Origin: Podarcis melisellensis
Taxonomy: Eukaryota
Strand: one strand, 5' to 3'
Assembly (NCBI GenBank): GCA_964234715.1
Contig: OZ174276.1
DNA length: 64,000 bases
Shown here: in pieces, positions 1 to 43,609 of the stretch
How positions within the stretch are numbered: the stretch's first letter is position 1
How the letters are laid out: each line of letters starts with the position of its first letter
Position numbers and translations under genes: made by a program
The notes under the pieces: model-generated
Told to the model about the DNA's origin: nothing
Database searches by the model: none
What the model saw: the letters and a program-made list of their open reading frames with translations, nothing else

Positions 1-2817
1 GTGCTGGGGTGGGTAGGGGATGTTCATTAAAAAATCTCCATTGAATAGCACTGAGGATAAGCAAATGAAACCCAACTAGGATGGTTTGCAGCCCGTTACA
101 TGGCAACTCTACTGCTTTGCTGGTGGTGGTTTCAAGGTTTGGGTGATAGATGGGAATAAATTACACCGTGGCTTTAATGGCAGGGGAAAACTGGAATTGT
201 TGAGTGATTGGGAGCACTGCCACATCTGACACAAATGAACAGCTTTTGCACATTTGCATGTTCATTTAAATATATGCAAATTGCCATTGATCAACATTTA
301 GATGCAAATACTGATACTTAGATGTGTCAATCCTACGCTTTTTCCTCTTTTTAATGGAATCTGGAATCTTGCAAAATTCTGTCTAGATTTGCCACTTTGA
401 AGGGAAAGTTTAGGTGCTTAGTTGTGAAAGGTTGTGCTGGCATCTAAATTTTAAGTGACAATGCCACACTCACCCATCTAGCTCATTGTGCATATATACT
501 TGTCCTTAATTTAGCTAGTATGCATGTACTAGGGTGGCTATTAATTAATTTATTTTTAAAGCTCTTTGTAAATAATTGGAAGGCTGTTTTTAAAATCTTG
601 TTCTGCTGGGTAATTGTTCTTGGCAGCCCACTTGGCCTAAATGGACGTGTCAGGTGATTATGTATTGATCAACAGGAATTAAAGTACATCTCCACAGTCT
701 GACAAAGCTTATCAATAAATGTGAGCTGCAGTGGAAGCCTCATAGGATTCTATGATCATTCATAACTTGTCTCGTTCTTTGGGTATGAAAGGATGTGTGA
801 GTTTGTGTGAGGGGGGGATCAAAGCCAGTTTAAGAAGTCAAAAGAGGGCATAAATTTTTGCCCAGCCTACAGGTCAGCCTTCTTCAGAGCATGAGATCAA
901 ATAACTGAGCATATTAAAGAATCTTAAGTGACCTATAACTTTGTTGTTGTCTTTGGAGTAGATGAGAAATTGGTCTGGATCCATGACTTAGCAGGCAATC
1001 TTACAAACAAGACTAATGTGAGAAGGTCAAAACCTAGATTTGCAATTTTAAGTAGATCCATTCTCTAACTGTAAACATGCCTCAGTCGTGAGGCTCTTGC
1101 AGAGCGAAATATGTTGTATGTATGTCTCTTCTGGTGACAGGTCACCAATTCACAGATCTATATAGCATTCTCAAGTCCAATATTTGTTCATAGAATCCAT
1201 TTGTTTCTTGGTCAAGTTGAGTCTACTTCACACAGGCATGTTCATTGCTTGGTATCTAATCTTTTGGTGATTTCCAACCATAAGTGTGATCTGTCATCAC
1301 TGAGGTTGTTGGGTGATATGAAAGTCCCATCTGTTGTGAATTGTGATCAAACGGCAATCCTGGCTCCTGTTACCTTCTCTCAGGAGGCTAAAAAAAGCAG
1401 TGCTACTTTTAAGAGCTCATGTTTGTCCCAAAGAAGGCCACTTTTCTTGTTAACTCAGCCTCACAGCTTAGTGGTTGAGAATAATTGTCCTGAGAGGGAA
1501 TCAGCTGAAAATAATCCTCACCTTTTCCGCTCAGTGCTGTTTACTGCATTGTGTTGCTGTTTTAATAGGTAGTTTGGAGGTGCCAGAGTTGCTTGTTGAA
1601 GCTGCAAATAGCCCAAGAACACTATGAGTAATTATATAGGGGGGGTTGGGGTCCGGAAAAGGGTTCCTTTCTCTTCATCCTGTGGTTGTTTTCCTATTAT
1701 GGTCAAGTCATTCTGTGCTTGGGTCTAGTCAGTGTGGTAGTTGGCCTCAGACAGGAGGTGGGACCTACAGTCCTACAGCGCATTATTTTCTCAAAGTTAT
1801 ATTTGTTTCTTCCTGGCAACATATTCCAATACACTTCACTGTATTGGGAGCTTTAATTAGTAGTAAGTAGGGCTTTGCATTGCTCACCTGGAATGCTGAG
1901 GGAAGTTGGTTTGGATCTAACATAGTAGAAAATGCCCTTTTATTCCTTACAGTGGACATTCCTTTTATTCCTTACAGTTCTTTTTTCAAGTCTCATGTAA
2001 AACTGACTTTCCTAGAAATTGAATTGTTCGGCAAGCTTAGAATCCAATAAACTAAAAGCTGCTACAACCTTGCCAAAATCCTTTGATCCTTTGGCTGTGC
2101 CACACGGTGCTGTTCTTTCTGCAAGGCTGCCATCTCTTTCTCTGCTGCAGTTTTCATTGTGGAGTTTCCCGTCTGTTTTCTCCAGTCAAACCAGTCCATT
2201 TTGATAAAACTAGCTTTGTTGCCCTCATTTGAGCATTGACTATTTTCACTGCCCTCCAGGATCCCTGTTGCTCAGTTTTCTTTAACCCTTGAAATGTTTG
2301 AGGCCCCCTTTAGGTCATTTCAGAAACTTCTGAGGGCTTTGGGCTCTCTGGCTTTTATTACATGAGAGTGCTTTGCTATCTTCAGGAGCCCAGAGAACCA
2401 AGAAATAGTGTTTCATGGGAAAGCTCTGCTTCAATCAACATGGGTTTTTAAATACTCACCTCAAATTTCCTCTGTGCTGAAGGTGCAAGTGGGAACTAAT
2501 TATGGAAGTCTTGGCTTTCTAAATGATACCTTTTAAGTGTTGCCTTTAAATCTTTAGATAGTCTACAAGCCAAAGAAAAGTATCAGGGTTCTGGGTCATA
2601 AGTCCAGAGCTTGATTGGGATTTGCATGCAGGTCTCTGAGTGACTTACTGTAGAACTGCAAGGTTGCACACTCCCAGTTGCTTTACAGTAGCAACAACTG
2701 AGAAACTTTCACCTAGATTAAGTCGCTTAAAAAAAGGTGGGGTCAGGAATGGATTTTTGTGTTAAAGGACATGTGAGCTTGGTTCTGGTACTGATCACAC
2801 CTTTCTTTTGCCTAGAG

Positions 2818-2953
2818 CAGTAATGGCGAAAGTTGGCCCTCCACCTGTTTTGGGACTACAATTCCCACCATCCCTGACCACTGGTCCTGTTAGCTAGGGA
2901 TGATGGGAGTTGTAGTCCCCAAACAGCTGGAGGGCCAAGTTTGGCCATCACTA
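2818..2953. mobile_element. Palindromic non-autonomous hAT-type MITE
   Basis: Self-complementary body (ggactacaattcccaccatcc / ggatgatgggagttgtagtcc); 8-bp TSD gcctagag/gcctaaag. Confidence 0.8.
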
Positions 2954-3579
2954 GCCTAAAGTATAGAGGAGGGAAGAAACTTTTGCAGCTCCCCTTAACC
3001 CAGCAAAACTTTATTTGTTAAGAGGTGGACAAGTTATATAGGAAATGCACCCAAACTATGAAAAGAGATCAAAGGTTTAGAAGAAAAGGTGATTTCTAAC
3101 TCTCCCACCATCAAGCACCATCTAATTAAATGTTTCCCCCCTTTCCTTTGCTGTTAAGATGGGGGGTCAAACTTAAAAAAGAATTTGCGTGCATGTAGGT
3201 TAACCAGATAGTAAATGTGGTGTAAAATAAAACACATAAGAACAAGAATCAGTGTGTGATCAGTTTACTTCGTGTCTTCTGAACAGAAACATTTCATAGG
3301 TGAAAGGAACGGCGCAGGAACATGTTAAAAGCAAAAGTGACTTATGGTATTTGCAGCCAAGAATAGCATTGCCCTTGAGACTGCAGTCGGGTACTTTTAT
3401 GAGAGAGCAAGTCCCCTTGAACTCAGTGGGATTTACTTCTAAGGAAACATGCATAAAATTGGGCTGTTACTTAGAGTGTATGGGATTAAAGTTCCTCCTT
3501 GGTGCATGTGACATTGCACAGAAACAGAAGGGTTTGATGGCCATAAGAAATGGTCCTCTAAGGGAGCATGTTTTGTTGC

Positions 3580-3581
<2 letters not shown>

Positions 3582-3626
<45 letters not shown>
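3582..3626. repeat. (CT)n microsatellite
   Basis: Perfect CT run. Confidence 0.95.
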
Positions 3627-3629
<3 letters not shown>

Positions 3630-4454
3630 CCTCTTAACATTCGGTTTCGGATACATTTATCTTTGTGAGTAAACACTGCTGCCCCTTAGTGGCTCTGAAT
3701 TTATTTGTTTTATTTTTAAGCAAACCACAGATTTCTTAAAGAGTTTATTTTCCCCTAGCTTCTTTCTTTGCATGGATAAGCTGAAAACATTTTCTGGGCC
3801 TTACAGGTTTTCCTTTTTCGTTTCTTTTCCTTTCCTTTATCTCCTCTGCATCTGCCCTACAAACAGCAGCCAGGATGATGATCTGGAATACAAAGGAAGA
3901 GCCATGTGTTAAACTGCAAAGAGCAGCTGAATTCTTGAGGTCTGTGGTCCTTGTAGCCCAAAACCACATCCTCCGGAAGTACAAAGCTTGAGTTCTTGCT
4001 GGGCCAGATGGAATGACCACAGGAAATGACTCCAGATAGTCATCTTTGGCAAAAAGCCATGCAATACCCTAATGTAAGGGGAGAGTTACTCTCCCTTGCA
4101 ATTAATGTAGATTTCCCCACCACCAGTTGAAATTAAGCTCTCTAGATAGGCTAGCTGTGCTTAATTGGAAATATCCTAATTGCAACATAGATTTGAAAAA
4201 AGGCTTTTGAATTACCATCCTCCTTCTTAAACATTTCATCATTTTTAAACAACCAAGTTAAGAGTGAGGTCTTGCAAGTTTATTAGCGTAATCAGATTTT
4301 TGCCCCAACAACCGTATACTGTAGCCTAATCCTGCAAAGTTTTGAGTTAGTGGAATTTTTGCCGAAGACTTTGCTCAGGACTCTGCTCTGAAAGTAATTC
4401 TTCCTACATCTTATTTTGACTACAATACCCAGTCACTTTCCTTGCATGCCCTGA

Positions 4455-4735
4455 TGTGACTACACTGGCTACCAATTAGTTTCCAATTCAAAGTGCTGGT
4501 TTTGGTCTATAAAGTATTGTGCTGTTTGTACCCAAATATCGCAAGGACCACTTTTCACATGAATCAACATGGGCATCTGATACCCATCTCTATGCTCTCC
4601 CCTGAGGGAGGATGTGGAGGGTGGTGGCATGAGAATGAGTCTTCTCAGTGGCAGCTCCCTGTTTATGGAATGCTTTCCCCAGAGGGCATGCCTGGCGCCA
4701 TCACATTTTAAGTTTATTAGACATTCATAGGGTGT
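4455..4735 (+). mobile_element. Degenerate L2-type LINE 3' fragment
   Basis: ctacactggctaccaatt...caattcaaagtgctggttttggtctataaag gives the LHWLPI...QFKVLVLVYK motif of the L2 ORF2 C-terminus. Boundaries approximate. Confidence 0.65.
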
Positions 4736-4972
4736 GGTGTGTGGTATCGTAATTGCTTCTCTAGCTCAGAGCATGCGACAATGGTATCAAGTAAGTATCA
4801 AGAAGGACCTATCTGCACCAATCTCAATTGTCACCTGTTTCCATCTCTCCATCACCTTGCCTCTTAAAGCTCACATTGGGCTCTTAAGATGTTGTCATGA
4901 TCACGAGAAAAGCACATTATAGTCTGTAGCACATGTGGAGACCTAATGTTTGTCTTGTTCCCTATGACACAG

Positions 4973-5107
4973 GTGGAGATTTGGCATCTGCAGATCCCAT
5001 GTTCCTGGAGCAGTATGTGGTGGTGGCAGATTACCAGAAGCAAGAGAGCTCTGAGATTAGCTTGTGTGCTGGCCAAGTGGTGGACATAATTGAGAAGAAT
5101 GAATCTG
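4973..5107 (+). CDS. SH3PXD2B: SH3PXD2B (Tks4) coding exon, N-terminal part of SH3 domain 1 (probably orthologous to human exon 7)
   Basis: gacacag|GT acceptor and TCTG|gtaagg donor; 135 nt, phase 1-1. Encodes [46 protein letters not shown], which matches the Tks4 first SH3 domain. Confidence 0.96.
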
Positions 5108-5136
5108 GTAAGGAGAGTGCAATGGAAGCTTTAAAT

Positions 5137-7903: not shown

Positions 7904-8008
7904 GCTGGTGGTTTGTGAGCACATCAGATGAACAAGGATGGGTCCCAGCTACATGCTTAGAAGTTCAGGATGGAGCCCAGGATGAATTTTCAATGCAACC
8001 TGAAGAAG
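7904..8008 (+). CDS. SH3PXD2B: SH3PXD2B coding exon, C-terminal part of SH3 domain 1
   Basis: ccctttag|GC acceptor and GAAG|gtgaga donor; 105 nt, phase 1-1. Encodes [34 protein letters not shown]. Not in the ORF track; found by reading the sequence. Confidence 0.96.
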
Positions 8009-8900
8009 GTGAGAAAATGGCTTAAGAGAAGCTCCCCAATAATTCCTGGGTTTATTATTTGAACTGCTCTAGTCCAGCTAAATTTTTCAGGCTGTTGTCC
8101 AGGGAGCAAAAACTCCAGTTTGGTTTGCATTTTAAAAAGTCCTAACATCTCTCCTCTCTAGCAAGCTCCCATGAAGGCTGAACTGGATATCACTGACAGA
8201 GAAGGTGGTGCTAATGAGCTTGCTTGAGCCTTTCCCAGCCTTCAGTATCCAACTTTTCCTCCATCTTTGAGCCACAAGCCACACCAGCCTTTGATATGAA
8301 GAGCACATATTCTGAATTAAGACATCTGAATGGGTGCTTTGTTGGGTAATTTATTTTTTTTATGACAGCTGCTGTTATCCTATTGCATTGCACCTGAATA
8401 ATATTTGATACAGCTGTCCACACTGGAAAGTCCCAAGTGGTTTACATGGACTCCACGGTGGTTTCTCTTCCCCTTTCTGCTCAAGTTCACATGCACTTAT
8501 TTTCAACAATGCGGCAACAGCAGGTGCTCCTGTGACATTTGCTAGGTCCTCCCCATGGTGGCTTCTTGTGATGGAATGAGAAATGCAGAGACAGACATCA
8601 ACAAAACAGGTCTAAAGTGTCAAAAGTGCACAACGCTTTTTGAGGAACTTCTTGAGTTTGTTGTGATTTCTTCGTTCCTTCCTTTTTTAGAAGGTGCAGA
8701 TACTTCTCATTTCTAATATGACGCCTTTGTTAAGCAAAGCATCCAAGTCTTTCATATGAGCTGTGGAGGGATCAAGGTGCATTGTCTGGTTGTGGAATTG
8801 TCTGCTCTATTAAACAAGGCTGATACTTCCAAGGAGTGAAGAGCTGCCTCCTTACACCCTGTTTTGTCCCTCTCCTGCTTCCCCAACATGCTCCTCCCAG

Positions 8901-8984
8901 TCCCATGGAGATACTGGTCTCTTCCCAGGCACGTGGGCCGCCGTCGGACTCTTGGGGACTTGTACACCAGTGGATGGGGTCAAG
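8901..8984 (+). CDS. SH3PXD2B: Putative alternatively spliced 84-nt cassette exon of SH3PXD2B (SH3-1/SH3-2 linker insert)
   Basis: Long pyrimidine tract ending ctcctcccag|TC and weak donor CAAG|gtggat; 84 nt, phase 1-1, no stop. Encodes VPWRYWSLPRHVGRRRTLGDLYTSGWGQ. Three TGCATG elements follow at 9054, 9079 and 9091. Confidence 0.8.
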
Positions 8985-9053
8985 GTGGATGCCGTGGAGA
9001 TTGCTTTTATTGACCTCCATTTGTGCTTTGGACATTTGTCTACTTCCCGTTTC

Positions 9054-9096
9054 TGCATGTGCTGCCCATTGTGGTGTTTGCATGCGTTGTTGCATG
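9054..9096 (+). promoter_or_regulatory. Cluster of three RBFOX-type intronic splicing elements (TGCATG)
   Basis: TGCATG at 9054-9059, 9079-9084 and 9091-9096, 70-112 nt downstream of the cassette-exon donor. Confidence 0.7.
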
Positions 9097-11248: not shown

Positions 11249-11482
<234 letters not shown>

Positions 11483-13904: not shown

Positions 13905-14556
13905 CATTTGAAGGACACAGCTGATACGTATGGTCTACAAACATGTACCTGTCAATTTTGCAATATGCGATGTGGCCCTTAGTCAGGCCCACTAGACTGT
14001 GACATTTGTCATGCTGCTTCAAAATAAGCAGAAATCATTCTGGACTCACTACATTAGAGTAGACCAGTGCATTTCAGGTAACAAATGATCAGAGGGTCTT
14101 TCTCTGTGCCAGTGATGCACCCATAATGGGTTGGAGACTCCTGTGTTCCAGATTAGTCTTGCTGTCCCTGTATGCCATAATCCATTCCACATCTGGAGAC
14201 TGGTTATTACATCACAGCATACTGCCAGTATATAGCCTTTCCCCCCCAATGAGGTACAGTACAGCCACCTTGGGCATCTATGGAAAAATGGGAGATAAAT
14301 TAGTTTAATCAACAATAAGCAAACATTCATAATTGTGAAGCTATGTGGTCTTGAAAGATAATCAAGAGTGTATCTCTCAGATAACGGAAGAATGAAATGG
14401 GGGGGGGGGGAATCTGGATTGATCAGTCTGATTTCTCAGACTGTTGATTCAGAACCCTTTTTGTGCCTCTCAAGAACTGCTATGAATCAGGCTGGCTGTA
14501 GCCGTGATAAGAACGAGACAGAAGTCTAAATAATTTGACTGTTCATATTGCTGCAG

Positions 14557-14783
14557 GTATCAGGGTCAGGAGGGCTGGGCCCCAGCGTCGTACCTGAAAA
14601 AGGGGAGTGGTGACATGCTTGCTCCAAAACTGGGATCTGCCACTTCCGCCCACTCCTATGCACTAGACCTGGATGGAATCTCCCGGCAGCAGAACTCGGC
14701 GGGCCGAGACAAGGATGGGCCGAACAACCAAAGAGATGGAAGGTTTGATGGTCGCCCATTGCCAAATGTGGACCTTAGGCGAA
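14557..14783 (+). CDS. SH3PXD2B: SH3PXD2B coding exon, end of SH3 domain 2 and linker
   Basis: gctgcag|G acceptor and CGAA|gtaagt donor; 227 nt. Encodes [18 protein letters not shown]...[13 protein letters not shown]...DLRR. Confidence 0.95.
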
Positions 14784-15271: not shown

Positions 15272-15321
15272 AATCACCAAAGATGAGACAGAGACCCCCT
15301 CCTCGTCGAGATCTCACAATA
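15272..15321 (+). CDS. SH3PXD2B: SH3PXD2B 50-nt coding exon (proline-rich PPPRR motif)
   Basis: ttggcag|AA acceptor and AATA|gtaagt donor. Encodes (K)SPKMRQRPPPRRDLTI; phases fit both neighbouring exons. Confidence 0.95.
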
Positions 15322-16911: not shown

Positions 16912-17121
<210 letters not shown>

Positions 17122-18060: not shown

Positions 18061-18403
18061 AGTAGTTTTCTTGGCCAATTGGATTCTTGTGCTGTGTGTG
18101 TCCACGTTTGCTTGGAGAAGAGAGCTGACGTGAAAGGTGGTCTGCTACTTTTGATGCTCTGAATACATATGCATGGGTGGATGCACCGGTACAAGAGAGT
18201 GGTTCCCATTTAATAGTGCAAACTAGCTAGAAGTACATGATTATATTTTGTATTGCACAAGGGCCTCAGCCACTTCATACATGACACAGAGACAAGCCCA
18301 GTTGTGTTACTGAGTGTTAACGCAACAAGGAGTTGCAGCCAATCTATGACTCCTCTTGCAACAGATGCATGCATGGCATCCACATATTACATTTGTAGGT
18401 GTG

Positions 18404-19111: not shown

Positions 19112-20650
19112 GTCATTGAGAAGAACCTGAGTGGTTGGTGGTACATCCAGATAGAGGAGAAGGAAGGCTGGGCACCAGCTACTTTCATTGACAAGTACAA
19201 GAAAACTAGCAATGCATCTAGACCTAACTTCTTGGCACCGCTGCCGAATGAAATGGCGCAGCTCCGGCTTGGTGACAGTGTGGCAGAGAGCAGCTCTAAT
19301 GGAGAAGCCTTTGGGCCATCCAGGCCTCTGCCTGAAGCACCACCCAACGACATAGACAGTGCAGGGAAATGGAAAGCGAAGGAGGTTTCCAAGGGTGCCC
19401 TGCCAGAGAGCAGCGATGCATCTCTCTCCGTGGGGTACGAGGAGATTTGTGATCGGGACGCCGAAGAGAAGCCGAGCCTCCCTCCGAGGAAGGAATCCAT
19501 AATTAAATCCGAAGAGGAGTTGATAGAAAGGCAGCGGTTGGAACAGAGGCCACCTCCGAAGCCTCCTGGCATGATTTTGCCTGCGATTCCCCCCAAGCAG
19601 GCTGTCCCTCCAAGGGACAACAGGAAGCCAGAGCTCAAAACAGAGAAGGGGAAACTGTTCCAGCTGAAAAACGAAATGGGGCTAGAGTGTGGGCACAAGG
19701 TGTCTCCCAAAGAGGTGAAGAAGCCGAACCTTCGGCCCACTGTTAAGCCTGCCAAGCCAAAAGTTGAGCCCCCGGAGGACAAGCCTGAGCTCGGGACCCC
19801 GAACCCTTTCCTGAAATCAAAGCCTCAGGTCAGACCCAAGCCAGCAGCAGCCCCTAGGACAGATCCCCCTCAGGGAGATGACAAACTAGACATTTGCAAC
19901 CTGAGGAGCAAACTCAGGCCTGCCAAAGCGCAAGAGAAGCCTTCTGATCAGGACCCCACGGCTGGCGAGAATGCCTTCAGTAACAACGCACTTCCTGTGG
20001 AATCTTCTGTCCGGTCTCAGGAAAGGCCAGCTGTGGAGATGAGGCCTCCATCCAGACCAGACAGCCAAGTCTTCAAGGAGGCTGCTTCATCCAAAGTTCC
20101 TTTTGGCTCCGCAAAGCTGAGTGAGGCCGATTCCAAGGGTAGCTTTCCAGCTTCCAGGGAACCACCTCAGCGGCCTGTGGTACCACCCAGGAGGCCGCCG
20201 CCTCCCAAGAAAGCCTCCACACCATCGCCTGCATCTTTGTTTGCCCCCTCTCCAGAAAATAAAGCTCCACAGAGGGAAGTGCCTGAACTGAGAGCTGCCT
20301 CTGTGCCTGGCAGGCCGATGCTGGTTCCACCAAAAGCCAAAGGTTTCCTGCCAGCTCCGTGCCAAGATGATGCCAAAGCGAAAAGCGGCCTAGGCCCAAA
20401 AGGAATCCCCAAGCCTGTGGAGAGGGAGAGAGGATCCGTCCCCATCACCAGTTCAGACGTCTCCAGAGAAGCCCTCTATGTGGCTGTGGCAGATTTTGAT
20501 GGCGATGAAGAAACCAGCAGCTTTAAAGAAGGGACCTTGTTTGAAGTCCGAGAGAAGAACAGCAGCGGCTGGTGGTTCTGCAAGGTCCTTGCTGGAGCGC
20601 CATGTTGGGAAGGCTGGATTCCTTCCAATTATCTCAGAAAAAAGCCATAA
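19112..20650 (+). CDS. SH3PXD2B: SH3PXD2B last coding exon: end of SH3-3, long proline-rich region, SH3-4, stop
   Basis: ttccgcag|GTC acceptor; 1539 nt open to TAA at 20648-20650. Runs [13 protein letters not shown]...GYEEI...[36 protein letters not shown]...[13 protein letters not shown]. Confidence 0.97.
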
Positions 20651-38419: not shown

Positions 38420-38703
38420 TAGAATAGTATGCACATTTACTAGCTTTATGAAAAAGTACATGCAAGTTGCCAGACAAGCGGCAGAGACATCTGGTTTTGA
38501 CCATCTCCCCAAATATAAGATCATGCTTCAGCAATGCCAATGCAAGGCACAGCTGGTGGCAACAAGGGTTTAGTTGGCCTATAAAATGCCACAGAGAGAG
38601 GCAACAGCCCACTGAAGCCAGGTAGAATGTAATGCCGCTCCAAAGCTGTAAAGAAATCTCAGCGTTACACTACACTACACCCATATTTTTGAGCTGCACT
38701 TAC

Positions 38704-39411
38704 CTAATATTTTGAGTTGATTGATTACACCATGGATCGTGAAAAATACCCACAGTGACTGCGAGGTATCAACGCACATCAGCATCCCACGGTTGATCCC
38801 GTTTATTCCATGGTGCACTTCTCCATTTGGCAAGACCACAAAGCTGAGGATGTCCCCATTGTTGAGGACTGGGAAACCTCGGCAAACCACCCAGTATTCC
38901 TTGCGATCCAGAAGGAAGTCTGGATCCGCTGGGAGCTCATTTGTTCGTAAAGTACCAGGATCACAAGAAGTGATGCCAAACGTGAGGGCTCCATAGTACG
39001 GCAGCCCCAGGTGTCCAACTTCCACAAAGAGGCTTTCACCAATGTGCAAAGGCCGGTCGGAAAACACCAAAGTCCTATTGCTCTCTTGCCAGTTGGTGCA
39101 GGCAGACATCCGGTCCTGAGAAAAGTTAATGTCGGGCCCACGAGTAGGGTGGAAACGCAGATCTGTATCGAGAAAGGCAGGCACCACTTGGGCAAGCTGC
39201 CGCCTGCTTGGACAGCAAGGGATGGTGTGATTATCTGTCGGCAGCGCAGGCATACGGCTCAAGTTCAGATTAGCAATTTTGGCCACCACCTGGTTGTTCT
39301 CCAGTTCGTTGTTGTTGAAGTTGGCTGAGTCGTGGCTGCTCTGTGGAAGGCAAGTGCTGAGTCGTGCGTTGCTGAGACGGGTGGAGGTCATCGTCTCGGC
39401 AAACATGCTGT
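38704..39411 (-). CDS. NEURL1B: NEURL1B coding exon, NHR2 domain
   Basis: ctcacag|AC acceptor and TTAG|gtaagt donor; 708 nt, phase 1-1. Encodes DSMFAET...NFNNNELENNQVVAK...LRFHPTRG...FGITSCDP...LDRKEYWVV...QLKIL. Confidence 0.97.
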
Positions 39412-42719: not shown

Positions 42720-42885
42720 ATTTCATTTATTTATTACATTTACATTCCACCTTTCCTCCAAGAGCTCATGGTGGCACACCTGGTTCTGTCCTTCTCAGTT
42801 ATTACCCTCACAGCAAGCCTGGGCTTGGCAGAGAGACCGAGAGCTTCATACCTAGGTAGGGATTTGAACCCGAGTCCCAGTAACA
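42720..42885 (-). mobile_element. Degenerate SINE, antisense to + strand
   Basis: AT-rich tail tttattattacattt, body ccacctttcctccaagagctca..., and reversed B-box gggatttgaaccc. Confidence 0.55.
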
Positions 42886-43048
42886 GTGACTGGATGAAAA
42901 TGAAAATGCAAGCTTAGTATCCGGGCTTTACACTTTACAACATAAGCACTGCTACCAACCTCACACAGCTTGTTCTGAGAGAAGGGAGACATGACAAAAG
43001 GGTCTATACAGAAGGAGATTTTTTTTTTAACAGACCATATACACCTAC

Positions 43049-43609
43049 CTAGTATTTGCACTTCATGTGTGATTCCATAGACATCTATCAGTGCCCAGAG
43101 AGGCCCGGAGACTTTGACGCCACAGTGAAACAGAATTGGCTCTTCATCATTAACGCTATAGAAAACTCTCCCATGGCGGTCGACCCAGAACGCCAAGATG
43201 TTGTCTCTTAGTGCAAACCTCTCTGGCAGGGCTTTGGCCCAGAAGCCTGGCCGTGTCACCAGGTCTGGGCAGGCGTATTTTGGTATGTCGTCTGCGCTCA
43301 TCTGCGATGGATCGTGAGTGGTGAAGCCAAAGCGCAGGGCCCCGCTCCACCCGTGGTGCACAGACACCAGCTTGAGACGCACTTTCTCGTAGAGGTGGAT
43401 GGGCCGGTTGGTGAAAGTGACGCCGTTGCAGAAACTGTTCCTCCGAGTGGCTTTGCGGGAATGGGCATCCAGGCGTATGTTTTTTCCTTTGGCCTGGAAA
43501 TGGAATCGCGGAGGTTCAGTAATGGTGAGGACAGACCGCCTCTCATGGCTACTGTTAGGCAGAGTGTAATAAGGCCTGTGGGATACAGAGCGAGCCTGTT
43601 GACTGGTGT
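43049..43609 (-). CDS. NEURL1B: NEURL1B coding exon 2, NHR1 domain
   Basis: atttgcag|AC acceptor and CTAG|gtaggt donor; 561 nt, phase 1-1. Encodes DTSQQ...PPRFHFQAKGKNIRLDAHSRKATRRNSFCNGVTFTNRPI...WSGALRFGFT...PKYACPDLV...LWALIDVYGITHEVQIL. Confidence 0.97.

What the first reader, a model, noticed from the sequence alone, without database searches (positions are those of the whole stretch)
8901..8984. Hidden 84-nt cassette exon that inserts 28 aa between the tandem SH3-1 and SH3-2 domains of Tks4
Seen in sequence: a strong pyrimidine tract and AG at 8899-8900, an 84-nt stop-free phase 1-1 segment, and a weak donor AAG|gtggat. Spliced in, it gives ...QPEE-VPWRYWSLPRHVGRRRTLGDLYTSGWGQ-EEKY.... 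The ORF track misses it because its frame closes in the intron. Established: in the p47phox/NOXO1/Tks organiser family, tandem SH3 domains joined by a short linker form a 'super-groove'. From memory, the paralog SH3PXD2A (Tks5) has an optional 28-aa insert at the same position with a similar RRxTLG core. Inference: this is an ancient splice switch, older than the gene duplication, that lengthens the linker, changes ligand binding, and adds a basophilic kinase site (RRRT).
Basis: partly seen in the sequence, partly recalled or inferred. Interest (0 to 1): 0.8.

Follow-up and report, generated by a model that had tools for sequence, protein, structure and literature searches.

The report
Conserved Tks4 linker cassette exon
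The 84-base segment is a real optional exon of the scaffold gene SH3PXD2B (Tks4), conserved from fish to lizards and already annotated in human as "exon 8a", so the reading is right but the exon is not new.

Summary
An AG sits at 8899-8900, followed by an 84-nt stop-free phase 1-1 segment (8901-8984) and the donor AAG|gtggat. The window is from a Podarcis-type wall lizard.

Those features alone are not beyond chance: the intron holds 71 open AG..GT segments. Conservation settles it. The same exon lies in the orthologous intron of a snake, a kiwi, a sea turtle and a bony-tongue fish. Its peptide is 27-28/28 identical among the amniotes. Six of the seven variable exon positions differ only synonymously.

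Annotated Tks4 isoforms carry the insert in squamates, turtles, birds, amphibians, a marsupial, a whale and ray-finned fishes. A 2026 preprint names the human form TKS4c (exon 8a, NM_001445599.1).

The Tks5 paralog has an 84-nt, same-phase exon in the same slot, with RRxTLG in the same columns. The switch therefore predates the Tks4/Tks5 duplication.

GCAUG motifs 60-185 nt downstream are retained from fish to lizard but are absent beside the one Tks5 exon examined (a tinamou). This points to RBFOX-driven inclusion.

Functional effects are inferred only: loss of tandem-SH3 cooperation, as reported for long-linker Tks5, and a possible phosphosite.

The parts
4972..5109 (+). Tks4 exon encoding the first half of SH3-1 (approximate limits, from a protein match)
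   Evidence: tblastn of the Lacerta agilis Tks4 protein on the window, with 11390-11429 masked: 100% over residues 154-199
7904..8008 (+). Constitutive exon encoding the second half of SH3-1; ends ...QPEE plus one base (phase 1), donor GAAG|gtgaga
   Evidence: Sequence read; protein match
8845..8900 (+). Conserved polypyrimidine and branch-point region with the AG acceptor of the cassette exon
   Evidence: About 55 nt upstream of the exon align nearly base for base in lizard, snake, kiwi and turtle, while sequence further upstream does not align. It is the only acceptor in the intron with at least 80% pyrimidines
8901..8984 (+). 84-nt phase 1-1 cassette exon, orthologous to human SH3PXD2B exon 8a (TKS4c). 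It adds 28 aa between SH3-1 and SH3-2
   Evidence: peptide; alignment; mostly synonymous changes; annotated isoforms with the insert; human exon 8a peptide, 22/28 identical
8985..8990 (+). Weak 5' splice site gtggat (no G at +5)
   Evidence: The same gtggat is present in snake and turtle, gtgcac in kiwi and gtggag in Arapaima
9054..9096 (+). Cluster of three TGCATG motifs (9054, 9079, 9091), 70-112 nt downstream of the donor; candidate RBFOX binding sites
   Evidence: + strand density in the window is about 0.5 per kb. Two of the motifs are positionally conserved in snake, kiwi and turtle. Arapaima has five GCATG at +81 to +184. First noted in earlier finding s1-489361
11307..11424 (+). Constitutive exon encoding the first half of SH3-2; starts AG-GAG-AAG-TAT (E-EKY)
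   Evidence: Only 11307-11389 was used afterwards
15272..15321 (+). Small exon encoding SPKMRQRPPPRRDLTI. The PPPRR motif (15295-15309) is the reported intramolecular ligand of the tandem SH3-1/2 unit
   Evidence: sequence; role of the PPPRR motif from PMC12730246
19112..20650 (+). Last Tks4 exon (second half of SH3-3, long proline-rich linker, SH3-4, stop codon)
   Evidence: translation; 99% identity to Podarcis SH3PXD2B

Best explanation
The segment 8901-8984 is the lizard ortholog of SH3PXD2B (Tks4) exon 8a. This is an ancient, frame-preserving cassette exon that is skipped in the annotated lacertid gene models listed.

When included, it turns the short acidic SH3-1/SH3-2 linker (QPEE-EEKY) into a linker of about 38 residues. 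The added 28 residues are basic and predicted to be disordered. Their core, YWSLPRHVGRRRTLGDL, is nearly invariant from sturgeon to lizard.

Shown here:
- The exon is under coding-level purifying selection.
- It is orthologous across bony vertebrates.
- It is paralogous to the 28-aa linker exon of Tks5 (exon 10 by my reading of the published numbering).

Inferred, regulation (about 0.65): the weak donor is rescued by RBFOX proteins bound to the conserved downstream GCAUG cluster, so inclusion would be highest in brain, heart and skeletal muscle.

Inferred, effect on the protein (about 0.5): as reported for long-linker Tks5, the longer linker stops SH3-1 and SH3-2 from forming the cooperative tandem unit. 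That would weaken binding to PPPRR-type motifs, including Tks4's own autoinhibitory motif encoded at 15295-15309, and so shift the protein toward an open state or a different partner set.

Inferred, signalling (about 0.3): the invariant hydrophobic-x-R-R-x-T-L-G motif shared by both paralogs may be a basophilic-kinase phosphosite.
For: Sequence features.

Orthologous exon in snake (L001 5256-5339), kiwi (L002 78319-78402), turtle (L003 47121-47204) and Arapaima (L004 31751-31834).

Conservation is limited to about 55 nt upstream, the exon, and about 110 nt downstream.

Pairwise exon differences among the four amniotes are 2-7 nt of 84. The only amino-acid change is Pro to Ser in the snake.

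Insert-bearing annotated isoforms: gecko (28/28 identical), skink, girdled lizard, agamid, anole, snake, turtle, many birds, frogs, axolotl, Tasmanian devil, a whale, teleosts and sturgeon.

Human TKS4c / exon 8a with a 22/28 identical peptide.

Tks5 insert: same slot, same length, 8/28 identical without gaps. Only 125 of 200,000 shuffles reach the observed score. MAFFT aligns the two inserts without gaps, with R, RR, T, L and G as invariant columns. The tinamou Tks5 exon is 84 nt in phase 1-1.

GCAUG cluster.

AlphaFold2 gives pLDDT below 50 across residues 55-93, which cover the whole insert. pTM is 0.36 with the insert and 0.46 without.

Literature: in Tks5 only the short-linker isoform forms the tandem SH3 unit, and Tks4's tandem SH3 binds its own PPPRR motif: PMC12730246. 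Tks5 exons 7 and 10 are alternatively spliced: PMC4178035.
Against: None of the 15 members listed, of 20, in the lacertid protein cluster (Podarcis, Lacerta, Zootoca, plus Rhineura) carries the insert.

A search for short fragments found no RNA-contig-derived Tks4 piece with the insert.

RBFOX regulation rests on motifs alone. No paper in the library links SH3PXD2B splicing to RBFOX.

The AlphaFold2 models are not confident about domain packing in either form (pTM below 0.5), so they do not test tandem formation.

The one Tks5 paralog exon examined has no GCAUG within 400 nt downstream, so the regulation is not shared by both paralogs.
Confidence: 0.85

Rival explanations
1. It is a chance intronic pseudo-exon: an open AG..GT segment that is never spliced in.
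For: The intron holds 71 such phase-compatible open segments. The donor is weak. The listed lacertid gene models skip it.
Against: The peptide is 27-28/28 identical across roughly 280 million years (my estimate), and nearly all changes are synonymous. The exon is present in a fish. It is annotated as coding in dozens of species and in human RefSeq.
Confidence: 0.02
2. The conserved block is a non-coding intronic element, such as a splicing silencer or enhancer or a small RNA, and its open frame is incidental.
For: Conservation extends about 55 nt upstream and about 110 nt downstream of the open segment. Nucleotide identity within the segment (92-98%) is higher than coding constraint alone requires.
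Against: Substitutions fall almost only on synonymous positions. The fish exon differs at many third positions yet keeps the core peptide. Splice sites sit at the same positions in all five species, with the AG acceptor and the GT donor dinucleotide kept. High nucleotide identity with conserved flanks is typical of regulated alternative exons (my general knowledge).
Confidence: 0.03
3. The exon is real in vertebrates generally but has fallen out of use in lacertid lizards, where it persists only because little time has passed or because of linked constraint.
For: No listed Podarcis, Lacerta or Zootoca model includes it. There are no reads for this species.
Against: In the window the exon, both splice sites, the pyrimidine tract and three TGCATG motifs are all intact. 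The peptide is 28/28 identical to gecko, kiwi and turtle. Gene-model pipelines often miss tissue-restricted minor isoforms (my general knowledge).
Confidence: 0.08
4. The exon is included under the control of factors other than RBFOX, and the downstream GCAUG motifs are not the operative elements.
For: There is no experimental link. The conserved CU-rich upstream tract could equally bind PTBP-type repressors (inference). The one Tks5 paralog exon examined lacks GCAUG.
Against: Each of five species has 2-5 GCAUG within 200 nt downstream, against about 0.16-0.26 expected from the background densities. Two motifs are positionally conserved in amniotes while neighbouring bases vary. The cluster is also kept in a fish.
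Confidence: 0.3

Closest known systems
Human SH3PXD2B exon 8a, isoform TKS4c (RefSeq NM_001445599.1), as described in bioRxiv 10.64898/2026.07.22.740038
   Same: Same gene and same slot between SH3_1 and SH3_2, with a 28-aa insert. The human peptide VSWRYWSLPRPVGRRRTLGDLYAISWRQ is 22/28 identical to the window's.
   Different: The mammalian peptides (human, whale) have diverged at the C-terminal end and at PRH to PRP or PQP. Sauropsid, amphibian and fish peptides are nearly identical to one another. The preprint calls the isoform functionally uncharacterised. The passages I read mention neither RBFOX motifs nor homology to the Tks5 exon.
SH3PXD2A (Tks5/FISH) alternatively spliced 28-aa linker exon (one of the two alternative exons, 7 and 10, in PMC4178035; exon 10 by my exon count, not checked; present in UniProt Q5TCZ1 canonical, absent in Q5TCZ1-3)
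   Same: 84 nt, phase 1-1, between the SH3-1 and SH3-2 exons. It starts with V and is followed by EEKY. RRxTLG sits in the same columns, with a hydrophobic residue at -5 and at +4 of the Thr. Only the short-linker form is reported to form the tandem SH3 unit.
   Different: Only 8/28 residues are identical. The Tks5 insert is far more basic (KRRK...RR..RR) and lacks the WRYWSLP part. PMC4178035 says exon 10 is usually present in the main Tks5 forms, whereas the Tks4 exon is absent from the reference Tks4 isoforms. There is no GCAUG within 400 nt downstream in tinamou.
RBFOX-activated cassette exons (downstream (U)GCAUG clusters)
   Same: A weak donor and two to five GCAUG within about 60-185 nt downstream, conserved across vertebrate classes.
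   Different: No binding, knock-down or tissue data exist for this exon. Membership rests on motifs only.
p47phox / NOXO1 / Tks 'tandem SH3' (super-SH3) units with short acidic linkers
   Same: The skipped form has the family's short acidic linker (QPEEEEKY). The window also encodes the PPPRR ligand motif (PMC12730246).
   Different: The included form replaces this with a long, net-basic, disordered linker. PMC12730246 states that such linker variation is known only for Tks5 in this family.

Membership tests
Ortholog of SH3PXD2B exon 8a (TKS4c cassette exon) | Lies in the intron between the exon for the SH3-1 second half and the exon for the SH3-2 first half of SH3PXD2B | tested here: met
   Flanking exons mapped at 7904-8008 and 11307-11424. 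Gene identity: 99% to Podarcis SH3PXD2B
Ortholog of SH3PXD2B exon 8a (TKS4c cassette exon) | 84 nt, frame-preserving, phase 1-1, with AG and GT splice sites | tested here: met
   Same structure in four other species
Ortholog of SH3PXD2B exon 8a (TKS4c cassette exon) | Encodes the V[PS]WRYWSLPR..GRRRTLGDLY.. peptide | tested here: met
   22/28 identical to the human peptide quoted in the preprint. 28/28 to the gecko, kiwi and turtle peptides
Ortholog of SH3PXD2B exon 8a (TKS4c cassette exon) | Actually spliced into mRNA in this species, as an alternative to skipping | not testable with these tools
No lacertid model with the insert was listed
Paralog of the Tks5 28-aa linker exon | Same intron position, length and phase in the paralogous gene | tested here: met
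   Tinamou Tks5 locus L005 48804-48887: 84 nt, phase 1-1, between the SH3-1 and SH3-2 exons
Paralog of the Tks5 28-aa linker exon | Residual sequence similarity beyond chance | tested here: met
   8/28 identities without gaps. 125 of 200,000 shuffles reach the BLOSUM62 score. RRxTLG columns are invariant across both paralogs in alignment A1
RBFOX-activated cassette exon | (U)GCAUG motifs within about 300 nt downstream of the exon | tested here: met
   TGCATG at +70, +95 and +107 in the window
RBFOX-activated cassette exon | Motifs conserved across species | tested here: met
   Two motifs are positionally conserved in snake, kiwi and turtle. Arapaima has five GCATG at +81 to +184
RBFOX-activated cassette exon | Inclusion depends on RBFOX and is enriched in brain, heart and muscle | not testable with these tools
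   No reads could be laid. No paper in the library links the two
Linker switch that abolishes tandem SH3 cooperation (as in long-linker Tks5) | The long-linker form loses cooperative binding of PPRR-type ligands | tested here: inconclusive
   AlphaFold2 predicts a disordered insert and lower pTM (0.36 against 0.46). Neither model fixes the relative placement of the domains. The Tks5 precedent comes from the literature only
Basophilic-kinase phosphosite | R at -3 and -2, Thr acceptor, hydrophobic residue at +1, conserved | tested here: met
   RR[RW]TLG is invariant in 30 aligned Tks4 and Tks5 sequences
Basophilic-kinase phosphosite | The Thr is phosphorylated in vivo | not tested
   No phosphoproteomic source was consulted

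The most novel reading that the evidence does not exclude
Exon 8a is an RBFOX-driven switch at least as old as bony vertebrates and inherited from the Tks4/Tks5 ancestor. In neurons and muscle it uncouples the SH3-1/SH3-2 tandem unit of Tks4, which relieves PPPRR-mediated autoinhibition and re-wires its partners. The invariant RRxTLG threonine adds kinase control on top. After the duplication the two paralogs took opposite defaults: Tks5 mostly includes the exon and Tks4 mostly skips it.
Probability: 0.3. Interest if true: 0.55.

Novelty: already known. Interest (0 to 1): 0.3.

Why it matters
Tks4 and Tks5 organise podosomes and invadopodia. According to the literature read here, Tks4 dysfunction causes a hereditary disease in humans.

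A 2025 analysis of tandem SH3 domains states that only Tks5 is known to vary the SH3-1/2 linker (PMC12730246). A 2026 preprint lists the Tks4 counterpart but calls it uncharacterised.

This work adds three points I did not find stated in the papers read:
- The Tks4 exon is conserved almost letter for letter from fish to reptiles.
- It is the paralog of the Tks5 linker exon.
- It carries a deeply conserved downstream GCAUG cluster that the one Tks5 exon examined lacks.

Together these give a concrete, testable hypothesis for tissue-specific control of Tks4 autoinhibition. For genome annotation, the listed lacertid gene models lack a genuine coding exon.

Tried and rejected
Scripts used only 11307-11389 of that exon or masked the place.
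- The look-up of sequencing runs listed probable RNA contig sets and 2026 raw RNA runs for 'organism A', but they stayed unused for the reason above.
- Exons were searched separately or through database proteins.
- The look-up of encoding contigs gave no DNA for gecko Tks4 (gene 174 kb) or for two Tks5 genes (102 and 131 kb). It had no record for four non-longest isoforms.
- A search for short fragments carrying the Tks4 insert returned only insert-less Tks4 pieces and Tks5 pieces with their own insert. So there is no independent RNA-contig proof for Tks4.
- AlphaFold2 models with and without the insert show a disordered insert but give no verdict on tandem SH3 packing.
- Looking for the 12-aa alternative segment (FIQRTASFLLRG) of lacertid isoform X1 in the window's first 5 kb found nothing.
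- Literature searches for SH3PXD2B or SH3PXD2A together with RBFOX returned only gene-list co-mentions.

Full report
**What is in the window**

The window carries the 3' half of SH3PXD2B (Tks4) on the + strand. The last exon (19112-20650) is 99% identical to Podarcis SH3PXD2B proteins. The closest is P. raffonei, with 2 mismatches in 512 aa, so the source is a Podarcis-type lacertid lizard. A protein match places these exons:
- SH3-1 exons at about 4972-5109 and 7904-8008
- the first SH3-2 exon at 11307-11424
- further exons at about 14501-14782, 15272-15321 and about 16933-17061

Two Neuralized-domain ORFs on the minus strand mark a neighbouring neuralized-family gene.

**The observation**

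Searches confirm each stated feature at the stated coordinates:
- the upstream exon ends GAAG|gtgaga at 8008
- a pyrimidine tract ends in AG at 8899-8900
- the 84 nt at 8901-8984 are open in phase 1-1
- the donor is AAG|gtggat
- the downstream exon starts at 11307

The encoded peptide is VPWRYWSLPRHVGRRRTLGDLYTSGWGQ.

These signals alone are not beyond chance. The intron holds 71 stop-free, phase-compatible AG..GT segments of 45-210 nt. Only the acceptor at 8901 has at least 80% pyrimidines in the 20 nt just upstream of its AG.

**Conservation decides the question**

I fetched Tks4 loci of four other species: garter snake (L001), kiwi (L002), green turtle (L003) and the fish Arapaima (L004).
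- The exon sits in the orthologous intron in all four.
- The peptide is 28/28 identical in kiwi and turtle and 27/28 in the snake. By comparison, the first 27 residues of the neighbouring constitutive SH3-2 exon are only 85-93% identical.
- Among the four amniotes the exon differs at 2-7 of 84 nt per pair. Six of the seven variable positions differ only synonymously, and the only amino-acid change is Pro to Ser in the snake. That is the signature of a translated sequence.
- The nucleotide alignment is nearly perfect for about 55 nt upstream (pyrimidine tract), through the exon, and for about 110 nt downstream. Beyond that it decays to noise. This pattern is typical of a regulated alternative exon.

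**Annotation and literature**

Database proteins carrying the insert in exactly this slot come from many groups:
- squamates: a gecko (28/28 identical), a skink, a girdled lizard, an agamid, an anole and a garter snake
- a loggerhead turtle and many birds
- four frogs and the axolotl
- a Tasmanian devil and a whale
- six teleosts and a sturgeon

The core YWSLPRHVGRRRTLGDL is nearly invariant from sturgeon to lizard. Only the anole, the agamid, passerine birds and the two mammals change one to three of its residues.

A 2026 preprint (10.64898/2026.07.22.740038) reports that human RefSeq lists NM_001445599.1 (TKS4c). That transcript includes 'exon 8a', which adds VSWRYWSLPRPVGRRRTLGDLYAISWRQ between SH3_1 and SH3_2. 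This is 22/28 identical to the window's peptide. The preprint calls the isoform functionally uncharacterised, and it is the only paper in the library that uses the name.

The exon is therefore real but already annotated. It is 'hidden' only from the ORF track and from the 15 members listed, of 20, in the lacertid protein cluster. None of those carries it.

**The Tks5 parallel**

- Tks5 proteins exist with and without a 28-aa insert, VSKRRKAHLRRLDRRWTLGGMVNRQHSR, between ...TGE and EEKY.
- PMC4178035 reports that Tks5 exons 7 and 10 are alternatively spliced and that exon 10 is usually present in the main forms. PMC6991978 places the two alternative sites on either side of SH3-1. From these two statements I take exon 10 to be the linker exon; I did not check the numbering directly.
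- In the tinamou Tks5 locus the exon is 84 nt, in phase 1-1, in the same intron position (L005 48804-48887).
- Aligned without gaps to the window's peptide, it shares 8/28 residues, including R-R-x-T-L-G in identical columns. Only 125 of 200,000 shuffles reach the observed score.
- MAFFT aligns the two inserts without gaps.

Same slot, length and phase, plus a shared motif, make these paralogous exons. The cassette therefore predates the Tks4/Tks5 duplication.

**Regulation (inferred)**

The donor is weak: gtggat has no G at +5. Three TGCATG lie 70-112 nt downstream of it (9054, 9079, 9091).

I tested its conservation:
- Two of the motifs are positionally conserved in snake, kiwi and turtle, while neighbouring bases vary.
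- Arapaima has five GCATG at +81 to +184.
- Background densities of 0.8-1.3 per kb predict about 0.2 per 200 nt.
- None of the five species has GCATG in the 300 nt upstream.
- The tinamou Tks5 exon has none within 400 nt downstream.

Downstream GCAUG clusters are the established signature of RBFOX-enhanced exons. I therefore expect inclusion mainly in brain, heart and skeletal muscle. I found no paper linking SH3PXD2B splicing to RBFOX. This step remains inference.

**Effect on the protein (inferred)**

The skipped form has the short acidic linker typical of the p47phox family (QPEEEEKY).

PMC12730246 summarises three relevant points:
- Tks4's SH3-1 and SH3-2 act together on its own PPPRR motif to hold a closed state.
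- In Tks5 only the short-linker isoform forms the tandem unit (citing Rufer et al. 2009).
- Linker variation is stated there to be known only for Tks5.

The window encodes the PPPRR motif at 15295-15309.

AlphaFold2 on alignments with and without the insert predicts the whole insert to be disordered (pLDDT below 50 for residues 55-93). pTM is 0.36 with the insert and 0.46 without. Neither model is confident about domain packing, so this is no test.

The likeliest effect is loss of tandem SH3 cooperation, and with it a more open or re-partnered Tks4. The invariant hydrophobic-x-R-R-x-T-L-G motif fits basophilic kinases but is untested.

**What could not be done**

A search for short fragments found no RNA-contig-derived Tks4 piece with the insert.

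**Verdict**

The exon is a genuine, ancient cassette exon but an already annotated one (human exon 8a / TKS4c). The additions here are the depth of conservation, the genomic proof of paralogy with the Tks5 linker exon, and a conserved RBFOX-type motif cluster found beside the Tks4 copy but not beside the one Tks5 copy examined.

Noticed in passing
window 38675-39406 (-) and 42852-43382 (-): Two ORFs each match the Pfam Neuralized (NHR) domain (E 2e-42 and 2e-28). They are exons of a neuralized-family E3 ligase gene lying tail to tail downstream of SH3PXD2B. It is probably the NEURL1B ortholog, going by my memory of the human gene order.
   Followed up: partly
L005 48804-48887 (Tinamus guttatus SH3PXD2A): The paralogous Tks5 linker exon has a pyrimidine-rich acceptor region and no GCATG within 400 nt downstream. 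This contrasts with the Tks4 exon in five species and suggests the two paralogs took opposite splicing defaults after duplication.
   Followed up: partly
P0137 (Tiliqua scincoides isoform X1), compared with window 8985-9000: The skink model extends the insert by five residues (GGCGG), which implies a donor 15 nt further downstream. The window has no GT at that position (gag|attgct), so this longer form is not available here. The window does have in-frame GTs that would give 69-, 78- and 93-nt versions.
   Followed up: partly
Lacertid Tks4 isoforms P0132 and P0122 (outside the window, or not detected in 1-5000): A second alternative segment of 12 aa (FIQRTASFLLRG) lies just upstream of SH3-1 in the 919-aa isoforms and is absent from the 907-aa ones. 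This mirrors the second Tks5 alternative exon (exon 7), so both Tks5 alternative exons may have Tks4 counterparts.
   Followed up: partly
P0362, P0285, P0287 (RNA-contig-derived Tks5 fragments): Three Logan-derived protein fragments join the Tks5 SH3-1 exon to the 28-aa exon and then read on into intron sequence after ...HSR. These look like partly processed transcripts that retain the downstream intron.
   Followed up: no
window 18366-18375: An overlapping TGCATGCATG sits about 740 nt upstream of the last Tks4 exon. Its significance is unknown.
   Followed up: no
P0354 (Esox lucius), P0355 (Umbra pygmaea): The insert in these pike-family fishes is two residues longer (…DLFSTSTGFGQ / …DLFNTGTGFGQ). 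Length variation is therefore tolerated only at the C-terminal end of the insert.
   Followed up: no
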